64,000 bases of DNA from Oopsacas minuta (GCA_024704765.1 JAKMXF010000298.1:372001-436000); one strand, 5' to 3'. Counted from the first letter of the stretch, positions 7,101 through 11,602 are shown. Program-made: numbers and translations. Notes: generated by a model from the sequence alone, not told the origin.

Positions 7101-9590
7101 CACCAGTCTAGCATACCCAGTAGTCTAGCATTACCCTGACATGCATGGTATTGTTCTGGTAGTTTACCAGCTAGATGTGATAACACAGATAGAGATTGTA
7201 ATTGTATTTCTTCCCACTGCTCTGAGCTCCATGACAACCGGTGTACAGACCTACTGGTCCCAGAAGATGCCGGTTGTACCGGTGTGACGTAGTAGAGAAG
7301 AGAGGGTAAGAGCGGTAGATGTGAGAGTAAGAGTATAGCAGCTGGTATATCGAGAAATGAGTGTAATATGTTTAGAAGCAGTTTCTTAAATTCAAAATCC
7401 TCATGTGAGTTATCTGGTATGAATCTAGCTGCACTTGTAGGCTGTGAAAAGTATAAATAGAAAATTTACAGACAATTTGAGTCCATTTCCACCAAACTAC
7501 CAGTTAGAACTAAACCTGAAGGACAGTGGTTCCCAACATTTTTGCCTATGACCCCCCTGCTGTCTTCCGTAGACCACCAAGGAATCCATGGTTGGGAATC
7601 GCTGTTCTGGGATAAATTTGTACCATAACCAATCATTTTCAAAATAGAAATTTCAAATTTTCAAAATGTACCCAATTTCAATTCTAACTGTTAGATTTCG
7701 AAAGTTCACATACACATCCTGACGTCACACATAGCTGCACTAATAATAATCTTGAACACTACTTTAATATTAATTCTTACCTGTTCATGAATTTCAGGAC
7801 TACTAGATAACATTATTAGTGTTTGTAACAAGCCAGTTTCAATATAAGGAGAGTTAGGACAATGCTGTACATGTAGAGATAGTATCACCAACAAATCATT
7901 ACGTAACTCCCGTGTACTGATACTGAGAGTGTGTGGAGTAGGAGCGCCAATGGATACATCGTAGTTGAGAAGTTTTAACAAACATCGATGGAGAGAGTCT
8001 ACACATTCCATTGAAGAGAGTTGTGACTGAAGAAATAGCATAAATAATCATGCAATAACAGATTTCCTTGAATGATACCACGAGATGAGCTAATTTTAAT
8101 GTCCTCCCTCCCCGTGGGGCGTAGACAAATAGCTATCGACTAATATGGTAACTATGAAAAAGTATCGTGGTTAGTGAATGCTATGGAAATTAATTTGGTT
8201 CCTAATAAGATTTTGTATGTGATTATATATTTGTGCTGCATTGAAATGAATGAAACAATTCGTTTACCATTCAAGGAAATTAATTATTCTATTTACTTGT
8301 ATTTCATGTCTAGATCCATTCTCTAGTAGATTCCATAATATCTCCATAGCCTGATTAAACTCTACAGCAGTACCAGGACCTTGATTACCTCTTCCCCAGT
8401 CTATTAGCTCCAGCATCAATAGAGGGAGTCTCCCTCCTGAACCAGCTGACAGGATACTCTCTGTACCAGATACAGATCCTGATAATATACTCAGTACTTC
8501 TAACACACAGGAAAACAGGTGAGAGGTTGAGGATAGATCTTCTTCAAGTAGCAAGCCAATCTACAAGAATAATTAAACAATAGTTCAAGTTCCGACCGTT
8601 GGATAATTGAATAATTCTGGCATCCATGAAAATATTCAGGGTAACCTGTGTATGAAGCTTGCTTACTGACAATGGTATCTCAGCTGATATAAATCTAGGA
8701 TCGCGAAAATTCACCAAAACTTACCGGATACTATCTGTATATGTAAACGCGTAAAAAATAAAATGCTAATTTTTAAGTTTTTCTGTATTTTCCTTATCTG
8801 GTTATCTGATTATCTGAATTCTACTATACACAATTAATTACTTGTTTAGCAATGTGACTTCTCTCCACTATTTCCCTGCGTACAGATCTCTTCAGTTTCC
8901 TCTGAGGAGGTTTACTATCCAGATGATGATCAGCTGATTCAGATAAGCTATCTTCTAATGTGTATATTTCATGTATTGTGTTACAAACACTGATACATAA
9001 ATCTGGGTATGATAGGTCCAGTAACTTCCCCATTGACTATAAACATAACAATTGTATAGAAGGAAATTGATAACACTTTATTTGCTGAGATAAATATTGA
9101 AATTAAATAATACAGTATAACCTTAATGAACAGGGTACAAGGAACGCCGAAAAATGCTACCCCGTTTCCGTCTGTGGAGGTTCATTTGTGTGGGACTAGG
9201 AATTCGCTCTATTATTTTCACTTCGTTTCCAGATGTTGCCCGTTTCCACTGCCCCCAGTTATGGCGGTTACACTGTAGTAAATACGTGTATGTATTTACC
9301 TGTACGCATTTAGCTGCATGTTGAGTATAATTCTTTTCGTCAGAAGCTTTTTCCTTCAAAAACGGAATAGCACACAATTTTGTAAGTTCTATTAACATTT
9401 CATTCATTAATGGCCAAGAATCAAGTATTTCATAACAAGCTGGAATCAGCTGTGCTAATTCCGAAAGATCACTCATTAGAAATCCCTTAGTATTCTGTTC
9501 TATTACACGATTAATAGCGTGTTCATGTCTATCTGACACATCACTGATGTGAGGATCTGTAAGTAACTTCACTGCACTACCAACACTCAT
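4182..9590 (-). CDS. CFAP69: Cilia- and flagella-associated protein 69, multi-exon (ORF pieces 9123-9590, 8824-9033, 8264-8554, 7706-8041, 7019-7440, 6414-6752, 5922-6326, 5096-5650, 4182-4547)
   Basis: Collinear exon ORFs with CFAP69-like motifs: KLLTDP...PFLKEKASDE (N-terminus), DNMRAKIYSL...RYMDIKTGEIWREI, and C-terminal EYLERTSN...STTVFCGRSVKLES. Flanked by GT/AG sites. Confidence 0.85.
5721..5875. mobile_element. pogo/Tigger-like MITE family B (cagtcaactc...gagttgactg), in a CFAP69 intron
   Basis: TA-flanked TIRs. Internal aagtctgaaattgtacaaat...cccaaaccgtaaaagtaacatac is shared with the copy at 11299-11464 and, more loosely, with copies or fragments at 1-100, ~20880-20960, ~22073-22222, ~32455-32523, ~32908-33096, 33940-34097, 52604-52697. 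Confidence 0.8.
7524..7604. mobile_element. Short hAT (Charlie/MER20-like) MITE remnant
   Basis: TIRs cagtggttcccaac / gttgggaatcgctg. No clear TSD. Confidence 0.55.
9113..9275. mobile_element. TA-flanked MITE family D (cagtgtaacctc...gaggttacactg) in CFAP69 intron 1
   Basis: Related copies at 25330-25530, 27494-27591 and ~29620-29708 share gaaaaatgctaccccgtttc. Confidence 0.7.
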
Positions 9591-9839
9591 ATTTGCTATT
9601 CATTAAACAAAGTATAAAGCATTAAATATTGTCTATGATCAATTCTGTGTTTCACGAACCATAGCATTATTTATGTGCACATAGTAATATCCACGATACT
9701 ACTCTCAAAATATCTAAAATACCCTTGAGAGCTTAAGCATCAAGTGTTTTCACTTTTGGAATATTAGTTAGCAACGATTTTCACTTAAAATCGGATTTAT
9801 ATCGTGAAAGTATCATTTATTATTTTCATTAGCTAAACA

Positions 9840-10349
9840 ATGCTTTCAGAAGTATTTCTCCTCAAATTATGCATAATAACTGGAATTACAGCATACATCG
9901 TGGGACCTGTACAATTTAAAATATACTCCCGACAGGCTGGACATCTGGTGGGGAATCTCATGAGAATAATTCGTAAGTCAACAGCTATTTATGAAGAAGT
10001 TTCAAAAGATAAAGAAATTGCAAAAGTGTCAGGAGAGTTAAAAACTGGTATACAACAATTGAATAAGATTGGACAACAGTTTAGTATTGCGAAAAATATA
10101 ATTCGTTCTCCTTCACAGATTGTTAATTTCGCAAACAAATATGAAGCAATTGGAGAAAAATCGAAAAAGGAAGAGGTGAAACAAATTGAATCTAGTAAAG
10201 ATGTGAATTTACCCCAAAAGGATGAAGTTGAAAATGTCCAAAATGGACCTCTATACAAAGAACAAGTAGGTGGAGCAATTTATGTGGCAAGAACCACGGT
10301 TTTGATACAACAACATAAAAATGATCCTTATTCAATACAAGATAGTTAA
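9840..10349 (+). CDS. tatB: TatA/B-family membrane protein, most like mitochondrial-type TatB (169 aa, intronless)
   Basis: N-terminal short TM helix ending in a GP hinge (GITAYIVGP), amphipathic helix SRQAGHLVGNLM, then V-x-x-EL-x5-QL-x-x-I, a charged linker and C-terminal GGAIYVA. This matches my recollection of TatB, especially plant mtTatB. Confidence 0.65.
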   Translation: MLSEVFLLKLCIITGITAYIVGPVQFKIYSRQAGHLVGNLMRIIRKSTAIYEEVSKDKEIAKVSGELKTGIQQLNKIGQQFSIAKNIIRSPSQIVNFANKYEAIGEKSKKEEVKQIESSKDVNLPQKDEVENVQNGPLYKEQVGGAIYVARTTVLIQQHKNDPYSIQDS

Positions 10350-10612
10350 TGTATTATAATTTAGTTGCTTTTTCACGAAATTTATTATATTAAAGATCAA
10401 AAATGATTTTAACATAAAGTGGAGGATCCAAACTGTATTTCCAAATGATGAATATTCTGCGAATTTCGTCACAAGCATATACTGTATTAACTATCCATGG
10501 ATGGGTAATCTACTAAACAAATATCAACGCATACAGTACAAAAAATGAATAAATATAAATAAGATAGAACTAAAAATATTCGATTTAACATCTCTAACAA
10601 ATCCCAGAAAAA

Positions 10613-11197
10613 TTATTCCACCTTTATTTGTCCATCAATGAAAGCTAGGCTAATTGAATATATAGCTATTAATGGTACAAATATCCAAATCAGATTAGGA
10701 AATAGATAGAATGTGAACAGAGTAATCGCATCATTATGTCCTGTGTGTTTAAATCCACCAACAACTTCCATCATAAAGTAGAGCATAGTTTTAGAAAGTG
10801 TCATAGAACTTGCTATTAGAGCAAGTATTGAAGCTCCTTTGTAATTACGTGTACAGAGAGTTAGCAAAGAAATAATATTCAAAACGACTTCTACCAAATT
10901 CATTAGGGCTACAGAATAAATGAAATCATCATTGAGATCATCATACAATGTATCAACTTCTATATAAATACCGTAGCTAGCTTTCCAAATAGGATTGGAG
11001 ATAGAATGGGGTCTGTTCAATACAAATCCTAAATCCCAGAGAGTGATAATACTCGTAAAAATTAGCCATGTATAGATAAATTGCGGTATTTTTGCACTTG
11101 ATGGGAGGTATTTGGAAATTAAGTGTGAGATGATCATAACAGAGCCTAAGATTACACCCATCAGGATTGAGCCAAATATCAGTTCTTCTTTTCCCAT
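10613..11197 (-). CDS. EXPERA-domain (emopamil-binding protein-like) multi-pass membrane protein, 194 aa
   Basis: About five hydrophobic helices. Motifs WD-x-G-x-VL-x-RP, Y-x-EVD-x-x-Y, E-x-x-N/LVE and PNLIWIFVP are typical of the EXPERA family. Confidence 0.7.
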   Translation of the reverse strand: MGKEELIFGSILMGVILGSVMIISHLISKYLPSSAKIPQFIYTWLIFTSIITLWDLGFVLNRPHSISNPIWKASYGIYIEVDTLYDDLNDDFIYSVALMNLVEVVLNIISLLTLCTRNYKGASILALIASSMTLSKTMLYFMMEVVGGFKHTGHNDAITLFTFYLFPNLIWIFVPLIAIYSISLAFIDGQIKVE

Positions 11198-11298: not shown

Positions 11299-11464
11299 CA
11301 GTCAACTTCCGTTATATCAACACGGATATATCAAAATACCCTTATATCTAAGTCTGAAATTGGACAAATATGGTCCCAAGCCGTAAAAGTAACATACATT
11401 ACCCCAGTTATATCGAAGTAATTTATCCTGGTCACTTGAACTTCGATATAACGTGAGTTGACTG
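11299..11464. mobile_element. MITE family B copy between the EXPERA gene and DHPS
   Basis: TA|cagtcaacttccgttatatc ... gatataacgtgagttgactg|TA. Confidence 0.85.
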
Positions 11465-11602
11465 TACGTAGTATGAGAATAGAATTTCTCCAATTAATAT
11501 ATTACACACTAATCTACACTAAATCGAATATTCTAAGTTCTATTCGCATGCAAAAAATAAAATTATCTAAATTGTTTCCTAAACCTTTTCCTACACAATT
11601 GA

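What the first reader, a model, noticed from the sequence alone, without database searches (positions are those of the whole stretch)
9840..10349. Nuclear gene resembling mitochondrial-type TatB in an animal-like genome
Seen: TM helix + GP hinge + amphipathic helix (GITAYIVGP-x7-RQAGHLVG), followed by V..EL.....QL..I and a C-terminal GGAIYV. As I recall the plant mtTatB consensus (G-x-TA-x-x-IGP...R-x-AGR-x-x-G...V-x-x-EL...QL-x-x-I), it aligns without gaps. The conserved TatB Glu8 position appears to be Lys9 here. Known: most animals lost the mitochondrial Tat pathway, with Bcs1 handling Rieske protein translocation. tatC persists in mtDNA of Oscarellidae sponges and Monosiga, and plants use a nuclear mtTatB with mt-encoded TatC. 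Inference: this lineage may keep a functional TatBC translocase, predicting an unrecognised tatC (possibly an unassigned mtDNA ORF). The gene sits among eukaryotic genes with similar composition, which argues against contamination.
Basis: partly seen in the sequence, partly recalled or inferred. Interest (0 to 1): 0.87.

Follow-up and report, generated by a model that had tools for sequence, protein, structure and literature searches.

The report
Glass sponge nuclear TatB-like gene
A glass sponge expresses a conserved nuclear gene descended from bacterial TatB, a part of the machine that moves folded proteins across membranes, although glass-sponge mitochondrial DNA has no annotated gene for TatB's usual partner, TatC.

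Summary
RNA contigs cover it, and five glass-sponge orthologues sit in conserved synteny with dN/dS of 0.16-0.32.

TatB homology is supported, but only indirectly. The protein itself hits no Pfam or NCBIfam Tat model. An exhaustive phmmer search found only its own family plus three proteins: RefSeq "TatB-like" from Oscarella lobularis, a Helgoeca nana (choanoflagellate) protein, and one unidentified transcript. These three hit TIGR01410 tatB, and one passes Pfam PF02416. Profile against profile gives probability 98%, E about 1e-13, with shuffled controls far lower. The nearest ESM Atlas clusters are plant and green-algal TatB.

The pathway claim is unresolved. I could not search this genome or its mtDNA for TatC. 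Published glass-sponge mtDNAs list no tatC, and that of Aphrocallistes has almost no spare room. Lys9 keeps a polar residue at the TatC-docking position, and E. coli TatB E8K is functional.

So glass sponges either hide a TatC or run TatB without one; both would be new. The papers I could search report no holozoan nuclear TatB.

The scan separately noted a second TatA/B-like gene elsewhere in this genome (s1-261142); I did not examine it.

The parts
9840..10349 (+). Complete single-exon coding sequence of the 169-aa TatB-like protein (stop included)
   Evidence: ORF list and sequence. Identical protein P0001 in the database. No splice joint inside it in the RNA run X4.
9831..10768 (.). RNA-seq contig covering the whole gene. 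Contigs carry no direction, and its 3' part overlaps the end of the minus-strand neighbour.
   Evidence: run X4 shows GT-AG splice joints in CFAP69, so it is RNA. Record 29 spans 9831-10768 at word depth 342, against 11.8 for the contig upstream (9570-9860).
9852..9908 (+). N-terminal transmembrane helix (residues 5-23), ending in the invariant Gly22-Pro23 hinge (9903-9908)
   Evidence: Kyte-Doolittle 19-residue maximum of 1.89 at residues 5-23. G22 and P23 are invariant in all eight aligned proteins.
9864..9866 (+). Lys9 codon (AAA), at the position of the TatB intramembrane Glu (E. coli E8)
   Evidence: Alignments. The position is K in four glass-sponge orthologues, Q in the fifth, and E in Oscarella and both choanoflagellate-type proteins.
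9909..10001 (+). Basic amphipathic helix (residues 24-54) with invariant R31, G34 and G38
   Evidence: Hydrophobic moment 0.5-0.68, net charge +3 to +4. Invariant columns. Falls within the hhalign match.
10017..10106 (+). Second helix (residues 60-89) carrying the V..EL.....QL..I motif, with invariant E66 and I77
   Evidence: inside the 74-column profile match. Helix predicted, at low confidence.
10140..10256 (+). Variable, charged, probably disordered linker (residues 101-139)
   Evidence: pLDDT below 50 for residues 101-139. Poorly conserved and gap-rich among the orthologues.
10269..10319 (+). Conserved C-terminal helix motif (residues 144-160), GGAxYV..T...I
   Evidence: G145, A146, Y148, V149, T152 and I156 are invariant in the five glass sponges. 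GGAKYF and GGARFV occur in P0008 and P0009. GGADIV is encoded in Oscarella genomic DNA.
9591..9839 (.). Short divergent intergenic region shared with CFAP69 (first exon 9123-9590, minus strand); probably a bidirectional promoter
   Evidence: CFAP69 ARM-repeat hit for the minus-strand ORF 9123-9590. The same head-to-head layout occurs in loci L001, L002-L005, L009 and L010. Promoter function is inferred.

Best explanation
This is a functional, vertically inherited, nuclear-encoded member of the TatA/B family of the mitochondrial TatB type. Glass sponges (the genome is apparently Oopsacas minuta) have kept it; most animals have no known counterpart.

The protein starts directly with a short membrane helix that carries an intramembrane Lys. 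A Gly-Pro hinge follows, then a basic amphipathic helix, a second helix, a variable charged linker and a short conserved C-terminal helix.

Inferred mechanism: it sits in the mitochondrial inner membrane. Its membrane helix docks on a polytopic partner, with the polar Lys (or Gln) playing the role of TatB Glu8 at the TatC polar cluster. It would then act as the small receptor subunit of a relic Tat-type route for a folded, cofactor-bearing protein. The Rieske iron-sulphur protein is the only known mitochondrial Tat substrate.

Shown here: the gene is real, transcribed, under purifying selection, and homologous to the TatB-like proteins of Oscarella and choanoflagellates, and through them to bacterial TatB. 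Inferred only: mitochondrial location, the partner and the substrate. The partner would have to be a TatC that is nuclear or so far unrecognised, since none is annotated in glass-sponge mtDNA.

The confidence given (0.45) is for the whole statement including the inferred mechanism. For the identity part alone (a TatA/B-family homologue of TatB type) I put it at about 0.93.
For: - **Gene and expression.**
- **Constraint.** Five syntenic orthologues with dN/dS of 0.16-0.32.
- **Exhaustive phmmer search.** Across 1.84 billion representative proteins it returned only the glass-sponge family plus P0007, P0008 and P0009 at E about 1e-4.
- **Identity of those three.** P0007 is RefSeq "TatB-like [Oscarella lobularis]"; P0009 is from the choanoflagellate Helgoeca nana.
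- **Their match to Tat models.** They hit TIGR01410 tatB at 3e-8 to 7e-5. P0009 passes the Pfam PF02416 gathering score, 23.4 against 21.
- **A direct hit from one glass sponge.** Orthologue P0005 hits TIGR01410 at 8.8e-4.
- **Profile against profile.** Glass-sponge profile against the Oscarella/choanoflagellate profile gives probability 98%, E 1.8e-13. The score of 86 compares with at most 16.6 in 60 shuffles.
- **Link to bacterial TatB.** The Oscarella/choanoflagellate profile against E. coli TatB gives probability 91%, E 1e-6.
- **Solved structures.** The N-terminal family profile hits TatAd, TatA and TatB chains in six of its top seven PDB matches.
- **ESM Atlas.** Top feature hits score 0.92, 0.92 and 0.90. 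They are eukaryotic clusters: the second and third carry PF02416, and the third is named plant TatB. 98 of 100 hits fall in the same family set.
- **A polar residue at the docking position is kept.** It is K or Q. E. coli TatB E8K is active with relaxed signal specificity (PMC3383694), and natural K8-Q215 pairs occur (PMC5201420).
- **Co-occurrence rule.** Every eukaryote so far reported with nuclear TatB also has mitochondrial TatC (PMC6251230).
Against: - The window's protein gives no direct hit to any Tat model.
- The glass-sponge-only profile hits no Tat chain in the PDB and does not match E. coli TatB directly.
- The signature Glu is replaced, and the Pro of the usual 'LP' after the hinge is lost in four of the five species.
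- No tatC is annotated in any published glass-sponge mtDNA. Oopsacas has 14 protein genes (PMC4520895). Aphrocallistes is 6% non-coding with only an unknown 137-codon ORF (PMC2267718).
- Mitochondrial TatC has never been found nuclear-encoded (PMC8662606).
- There is no cleavable presequence, and I have no localisation data.
- The structure models are of low confidence and uninformative.
Confidence: 0.45

Rival explanations
1. TatB-only relic. The protein descends from mitochondrial TatB but has outlived TatC, which was lost from glass-sponge mitochondria. It now does something else in a membrane, without any Tat-type transport. Examples would be an assembly or scaffolding factor docking on another polytopic protein, or a membrane-shaping role through its short helix and amphipathic helix.
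For: - No tatC is reported in glass-sponge mtDNAs, and the Aphrocallistes mtDNA has almost no spare room (PMC2267718, PMC4520895, PMC5633667).
- TatC has never been seen nuclear-encoded (PMC8662606).
- The family has drifted below every Tat model threshold. It has changed the signature Glu and the post-hinge Pro.
- It nevertheless stays under purifying selection.
Against: - No TatA/B-family protein is known to function without TatC.
- Every eukaryote reported so far with nuclear TatB keeps TatC (PMC6251230).
- The membrane helix, including its polar residue at the TatC-docking position, is the best-conserved part. That is what continued docking on a specific partner predicts.
Confidence: 0.35
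2. Chance resemblance. This is an unrelated small single-pass, helix-rich membrane protein restricted to glass sponges, and its similarity to TatB comes from composition and helical bias.
For: - No direct Pfam, NCBIfam or PDB hit for the window protein or the glass-sponge-only profile.
- The architecture is simple and short.
- The structure search found nothing.
Against: - The only hits outside the family, among 1.84 billion proteins, were three TatB-like proteins.
- hhalign gives E about 1e-13, while shuffled and reversed controls score no more than 16.6.
- The ESM Atlas gave an independent TatB answer.
- One orthologue hits TIGR01410 directly.
- The C-terminal motif is shared with the choanoflagellate proteins.
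Confidence: 0.05
3. Bacterial contamination, or a recent horizontal transfer of a bacterial tatB into the sponge genome.
For: Sponge assemblies are metagenome-like, and TatB is a bacterial protein.
Against: - The gene lies on a contig of about 526 kb between intron-bearing animal genes, with the same composition.
- The same synteny occurs in five glass-sponge assemblies.
- No bacterial protein appears among the phmmer hits.
- The Oscarella orthologue contains introns.
Confidence: 0.02

Closest known systems
Nuclear-encoded mitochondrial TatB of plants (Arabidopsis At5g43680; Carrie et al. 2016), also reported in stramenopiles and cryptists (Petru et al. 2018, PMC6251230)
   Same: - Nuclear gene in a eukaryote.
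- N-terminal membrane helix, Gly-Pro hinge and a long amphipathic helix, with a C-terminal extension longer than in TatA.
- The nearest ESM Atlas clusters are these plant and green-algal TatB families.
   Different: - Found in an animal (a glass sponge).
- The intramembrane Glu is replaced by Lys or Gln.
- No direct HMM hit.
- No mitochondrial tatC is annotated in the lineage, whereas every known TatB-bearing eukaryote has one.
- No residue-level comparison with a plant sequence was possible here.
RefSeq XP_065834246.1 'sec-independent protein translocase protein TatB-like' of Oscarella lobularis (P0007), and the Helgoeca nana transcript EP00037_P003015 (P0009)
   Same: - Clear homologues (hhalign probability 98%).
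- Same domain order.
- Shared invariant G-P, R, G, G, E and I positions, and a shared C-terminal GGA-x-(Y/F/I)-(V/F) motif.
   Different: - These two keep the Glu and the post-hinge Pro, and they match TIGR01410 and PF02416 directly.
- Oscarellidae, and the one choanoflagellate whose mtDNA the papers I read describe (Monosiga), carry mitochondrial tatC (PMC5633667).
- Only 21-25% identity to the glass-sponge protein, and no shared synteny.
Bacterial TatB (E. coli TatB; PDB 2MI2, 9DZZ, 9E02)
   Same: - Membrane helix, hinge and amphipathic helix architecture, and a similar length (171 aa against 169 aa).
- A polar residue at membrane-helix position 8/9.
- The family profile hits these chains.
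   Different: - The match is only indirect.
- Lys replaces Glu. In E. coli, E8K is a functional suppressor variant (PMC3383694).
- Eukaryotic nuclear gene with a different C-terminal motif.

Membership tests
TatA/TatB/TatE family (Pfam PF02416; TIGR01410 tatB) | Significant match of the protein itself to the family model | tested here: not met
   No Tat hit for the window protein at E up to 10 in Pfam or NCBIfam. The glass-sponge-only profile hits no Tat chain in the PDB.
TatA/TatB/TatE family (Pfam PF02416; TIGR01410 tatB) | Homology to recognised family members through intermediate sequences or profiles | tested here: met
   - phmmer reaches P0007-P0009 at E about 1e-4.
- Those hit TIGR01410 at 3e-8 to 7e-5, and P0009 passes the PF02416 cut-off.
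- hhalign gives 98%, E 1.8e-13, with controls no higher than 16.6.
- Orthologue P0005 hits TIGR01410 at 8.8e-4.
- The combined profiles hit TatA/B chains in the PDB.
TatA/TatB/TatE family (Pfam PF02416; TIGR01410 tatB) | Short N-terminal membrane helix, then a Gly(-Pro) hinge, then an amphipathic helix | tested here: met
   Helix at residues 5-23, invariant G22-P23, amphipathic helix at 25-50 with hydrophobic moment up to 0.68.
TatB subfamily | Intramembrane Glu at position 8 (the TatC polar-cluster contact), plus the hinge Pro | tested here: not met
   - The hinge Pro is present.
- The Glu is Lys in four glass sponges and Gln in one.
- A polar residue is therefore kept. K8 occurs naturally in the family, and E8K works in E. 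coli (PMC5201420, PMC3383694).
Nuclear-encoded mitochondrial TatB (plants, stramenopiles, cryptists) | Encoded in the nucleus of a eukaryote and expressed | tested here: met
   Sits between intron-bearing animal genes on a contig of about 526 kb. An RNA contig covers the gene.
Nuclear-encoded mitochondrial TatB (plants, stramenopiles, cryptists) | Sequence relationship to the plant-type mitochondrial TatB | tested here: inconclusive
   The top ESM Atlas clusters are plant and green-algal TatB (0.90-0.92, 185-193 shared features). That tool gives no alignment or E-value. The profile searches did not recover plant proteins.
Nuclear-encoded mitochondrial TatB (plants, stramenopiles, cryptists) | Co-occurrence with a mitochondrially encoded TatC | not testable with these tools
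   - Neither the rest of the genome nor the mtDNA could be fetched.
- A tblastn of E. coli TatC against the window and the fetched loci found nothing better than E 1.2.
- The literature lists no tatC in glass-sponge mtDNA (PMC4520895, PMC2267718, PMC5633667).
Nuclear-encoded mitochondrial TatB (plants, stramenopiles, cryptists) | Location in the mitochondrial inner membrane | not testable with these tools
   No localisation data. There is no N-terminal presequence, because the protein starts with the membrane helix and an in-frame stop lies two codons upstream of the start codon.

The most novel reading that the evidence does not exclude
Glass sponges break one of two rules that have held in every eukaryote examined. 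One possibility is that their mitochondria use a TatB without any TatC, which would be a 'TatB-only' state and a new role for a Tat subunit in an animal. The other is that they have the first mitochondrial TatC that is nuclear-encoded or hidden in an unassigned mtDNA reading frame, giving an animal class a working TatBC route beside or instead of Bcs1. In both cases nuclear TatB would go back to the common ancestor of animals and choanoflagellates. That would favour vertical descent of the Oscarella tatC.
Probability: 0.7. Interest if true: 0.8.

Novelty: new member of a known kind. Interest (0 to 1): 0.66.

Why it matters
- **Where mitochondrial Tat is known.** In the papers I could search, mitochondrial Tat in animals means one gene, tatC, in the mtDNA of Oscarellidae sponges. 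Nuclear mitochondrial TatB is reported only from plants, stramenopiles and cryptists (PMC6251230, PMC8662606). A 2026 Tat review does not mention sponges.
- **What this adds.** The gene, with its Oscarella and choanoflagellate relatives, shows that the TatB half of the system also exists in animals and their closest unicellular relatives.
- **Origin of the Oscarella tatC.** Its origin, vertical descent or transfer, was left open (PMC5633667). A nuclear partner gene shared with choanoflagellates argues for vertical descent.
- **The open question in glass sponges.** They keep TatB under selection while their mtDNA shows no tatC. This turns [quoted passage not shown] into a question that a few database searches and a localisation experiment can answer.
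- **Complex III assembly.** The finding bears on how the Rieske protein is inserted in early-branching animals, by Tat or by Bcs1.

Tried and rejected
- **Direct family scans.** Pfam and NCBIfam scans of the window protein gave only spurious weak hits, to RNA polymerase Rpb5 and subunit H.
- **Glass-sponge-only profile.** It gave nothing useful against the PDB or against single E. coli TatA and TatB sequences.
- **Word-indexed profile searches.** Two searches of the 5.8-billion-protein collection, with the combined alignment in two orders, added no new members: no plants, no other animals, and not the second TatA/B-like gene noted by the scan.
- **Structure.** AlphaFold2 on the full protein and on residues 1-100 gave low-confidence long helices (pLDDT 55 and 59). 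Foldseek against the PDB found nothing. I dropped structure as evidence.
- **C-terminal part alone in the ESM Atlas.** Scores of 0.64-0.67 are too weak to use.
- **TatC.** A tblastn of E. coli TatC against the window and fetched loci gave only noise. No tool reaches the rest of this genome or its mtDNA.
- **Scan notes.** No note mentions TatC, BCS1 or mtDNA, and look-ups by sequence were blank.
- **Papers not held.** Pett & Lavrov 2013 and Haen et al. 2014 are not in the library.
- **Rejected readings.** Contamination or recent gene transfer, and chance resemblance; the reasons are given under the rival explanations.

Full report
**1. The observation**

The + strand of the window has an ORF from ATG at 9840 to TAA at 10347-10349, encoding 169 residues. 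An in-frame TAA at 9834-9836 rules out an unspliced N-terminal extension.
- GITAYIVGP, seven residues, then RQAGHLVG (residues 15-38);
- VSGELKTGIQQLNKI (residues 63-77);
- GGAIYV (residues 144-149).

A simple calculation supports the proposed architecture:
- one hydrophobic helix at residues 5-23 (Kyte-Doolittle mean 1.89);
- Gly22-Pro23 as the hinge;
- a basic amphipathic helix at about residues 25-50 (hydrophobic moment up to 0.68, net charge +3 to +4).

**2. A real, expressed, constrained animal gene**

The gene lies head to head with the first exon of CFAP69 (Pfam PF21049, E 7.5e-22). GC content is 32-39% across the window.

Four public runs from one sample hold the locus. One of them (X4) shows GT-AG splice joints in CFAP69 and in another neighbour, so it is RNA. 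In that run a 938-base contig spans 9831-10768 at word depth 342, against 11.8 for the contig just upstream. No joint falls inside the gene. The gene is therefore transcribed and unspliced.

Database searches found four further orthologues at 43-56% identity, giving five with the window's own. One of them was called short, but its full reading frame is present in locus L002. All lie in the same neighbourhood:
- CFAP69 is divergent on one side in every locus;
- deoxyhypusine synthase and dUTPase lie on the other side in every locus, with a profilin-domain gene and an EXPERA-like membrane protein in most.

Pairwise dN/dS is 0.16-0.32, with synonymous sites near saturation for the deeper pairs.

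I did not verify this directly. It fits the published 36% G+C and intron size of about 340 bp (PMC10280926). It also fits the source of three syntenic contigs, labelled "BUSC20-1" metagenomes. By inference these are the Vazella pourtalesii glass-sponge metagenomes of PMC7426153.

**3. Is it TatB?**

Directly, no.
- The protein hits no Tat model in Pfam or NCBIfam, even at E up to 10.
- A profile of the five glass-sponge proteins hits no Tat chain in the PDB.
- That profile does not match single E. coli TatA or TatB sequences.

Indirectly, the case is strong.
- An exhaustive phmmer search of 1.84 billion representative proteins returned six hits. Three were glass-sponge relatives. The other three were P0007, P0008 and P0009, at E 1.2e-4 to 3.9e-4.
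- P0007 is RefSeq XP_065834246.1, [quoted passage not shown]. It is encoded with introns on a nuclear chromosome among animal genes.
- P0009 comes from the transcriptome of the choanoflagellate Helgoeca nana. P0008 is an unidentified 982-nt contig, about 55% identical to P0009 in the N-terminal region by eye.
- These three hit TIGR01410 tatB at 3.2e-8, 3.6e-7 and 7.3e-5. P0009 passes the Pfam PF02416 gathering score, 23.4 against 21.
- The most divergent glass-sponge orthologue, P0005, hits TIGR01410 itself at 8.8e-4.
- The glass-sponge profile against the profile of these three gives probability 98%, E 1.8e-13 over 74 columns. In my own rerun the score was 86.3. The best of 60 column-shuffled controls scored 16.6, and the reversed control 15.5.
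- The Oscarella/choanoflagellate profile matches E. coli TatB at probability 91%, E 1.1e-6.
- The combined profiles hit TatB, TatAd and chloroplast TatA chains as six of the top seven PDB matches.
- Independently, the ESM Atlas feature search put the protein next to eukaryotic clusters. The second and third carry PF02416, and the third is a 258-aa Streptophyta cluster named TatB. Scores were 0.92, 0.92 and 0.90, with 185-193 shared features, and 98 of 100 hits fell in the same family set.

I conclude that this is a divergent member of the TatA/B family of the eukaryotic TatB type.

**4. What is conserved and what has changed**

Across all eight aligned proteins the invariant residues are G22, P23, R31, G34, G38, E66 and I77.

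The intramembrane Glu of TatB is present in Oscarella and both choanoflagellate-type proteins. It is Lys in four glass sponges and Gln in the fifth. The Pro of the usual "LP" after the hinge is kept only in the most divergent glass-sponge orthologue.

The membrane helix is the best-conserved segment among the glass sponges.

Two published results bear on the Lys:
- E. coli TatB E8K is a functional translocase variant with relaxed signal-peptide specificity (PMC3383694).
- In natural TatA-family proteins, K8 pairs with Q215 of TatC, whereas E8A abolishes TatB-TatC binding (PMC5201420).

So the change keeps a polar, hydrogen-bonding residue at the TatC-docking position and does not remove it.

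A C-terminal motif, GGA-x-(Y/F)-(V/F), is shared with the choanoflagellate proteins. It is also encoded in Oscarella genomic DNA, in a frame that the RefSeq model does not use.

**5. The pathway claim**

I could not search this genome or its mitochondrial DNA for TatC. The window and the fetched loci contain none.

The literature says the following:
- Oopsacas mtDNA is 19 kb with 14 standard protein genes, about 17% unannotated, and was annotated with MITOS (PMC4520895).
- Aphrocallistes vastus mtDNA is 17.4 kb, only 6% non-coding, with one unidentified 411-bp ORF. Iphiteon panicea has two unknown ORFs (PMC2267718).
- Among animals, tatC is reported only in Oscarellidae (PMC5633667).
- Every eukaryote so far reported with nuclear mitochondrial TatB carries mitochondrial tatC, and TatC is always mitochondrially encoded (PMC6251230, PMC8662606).

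Glass sponges must therefore break one of these two rules. Either a TatC exists, nuclear or cryptic, or TatB has persisted under selection without it.

My estimates are:
- TatA/B-family homology, about 0.93;
- mitochondrial location, about 0.7;
- a TatC partner exists, about 0.3-0.4;
- a TatB-only state, about 0.35-0.45.

The scan's separate note of a second TatA/B-like gene in this genome (s1-261142) could shift this balance. I could not retrieve that gene.

**6. Comparison with what is known, and novelty**

The closest characterised system is the plant mitochondrial TatB-TatC pair, which inserts the Rieske iron-sulphur domain (reviewed in PMC8662606).

In the searchable literature I found no report of a nuclear TatB in sponges or choanoflagellates:
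- no paper holds both "TatB" and "choanoflagellate";
- among the 12 best-ranked of the 46 papers holding "TatB" and "sponge", the only relevant ones were reviews that mention sponges for tatC;
- Petru et al. screened the Monosiga proteome and reported TatB only in plants, stramenopiles and cryptists.

RefSeq's automatic name for the Oscarella protein is the only prior label I found.

I file the gene as a new, highly divergent member of a known kind. It has an unresolved and potentially rule-breaking context.

**7. Limits**
- The TatB assignment rests on intermediate sequences.
- The family sampled is small: eight proteins.
- The structure models were uninformative.
- Location, partner and substrate are inferences.
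- Absence from other animals cannot be claimed. A single-sequence search that only just reaches Oscarella would miss equally divergent orthologues.

Noticed in passing
L007:8001-8640 (Oscarella lobularis chromosome OX382157.1): The RefSeq TatB-like model ends in ...STG-RGHGRWG*, using a GT donor. A GC donor 4 nt upstream (CAG|GCAGGT) with the same acceptor would instead read ...EDMEGGADIVAEQAIIKSNLSKK* (8580-8636). That reading carries the C-terminal GGA-x-x-V motif conserved in glass sponges and choanoflagellates. The annotated C-terminus may be wrong, or one of two isoforms.
   Followed up: partly
window 10613-11197 (-): A single-exon 194-aa multi-pass membrane protein with a weak EXPERA/EBP-superfamily hit (PF05241, E 0.005, below the cut-off). 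It is conserved next to the TatB-like gene in most of the syntenic loci. RNA depth is very high (about 6000, against 342 for the TatB-like gene).
   Followed up: no
window 9173-9213 and 11334-11530: Short stretches whose summed contig depth in the DNA runs is 5-17 times that of the surroundings, with many loose ends running into unrelated sequence. These are probably copies of a dispersed short repeat. One sits in a CFAP69 intron and the other just beyond the EXPERA-like gene.
   Followed up: no
window 9837 and 9854: Two single-base differences (A>C just upstream of the ATG; A>G, synonymous in Val5) appear in runs X2-X4 but not in X1. All four runs come from one non-clonal sample, so these look like alleles.
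   Followed up: no
another piece of the same genome (scan note s1-261142): The scan lists a second, 237-base 'stand-alone TatA/B-like gene' in this genome. I could not retrieve it. If it is a canonical TatA-type paralogue, it would bear directly on whether a Tat translocase operates here.
   Followed up: partly
L006 (Logan SRR33984645 contig, 982 nt): An unidentified transcript-like contig with high GC by eye encodes a 187-aa TatB-like protein (P0008). It keeps the Glu and a C-terminal GGAKYF motif, and it resembles the Helgoeca nana protein, so it probably comes from another choanoflagellate-like organism.
   Followed up: no
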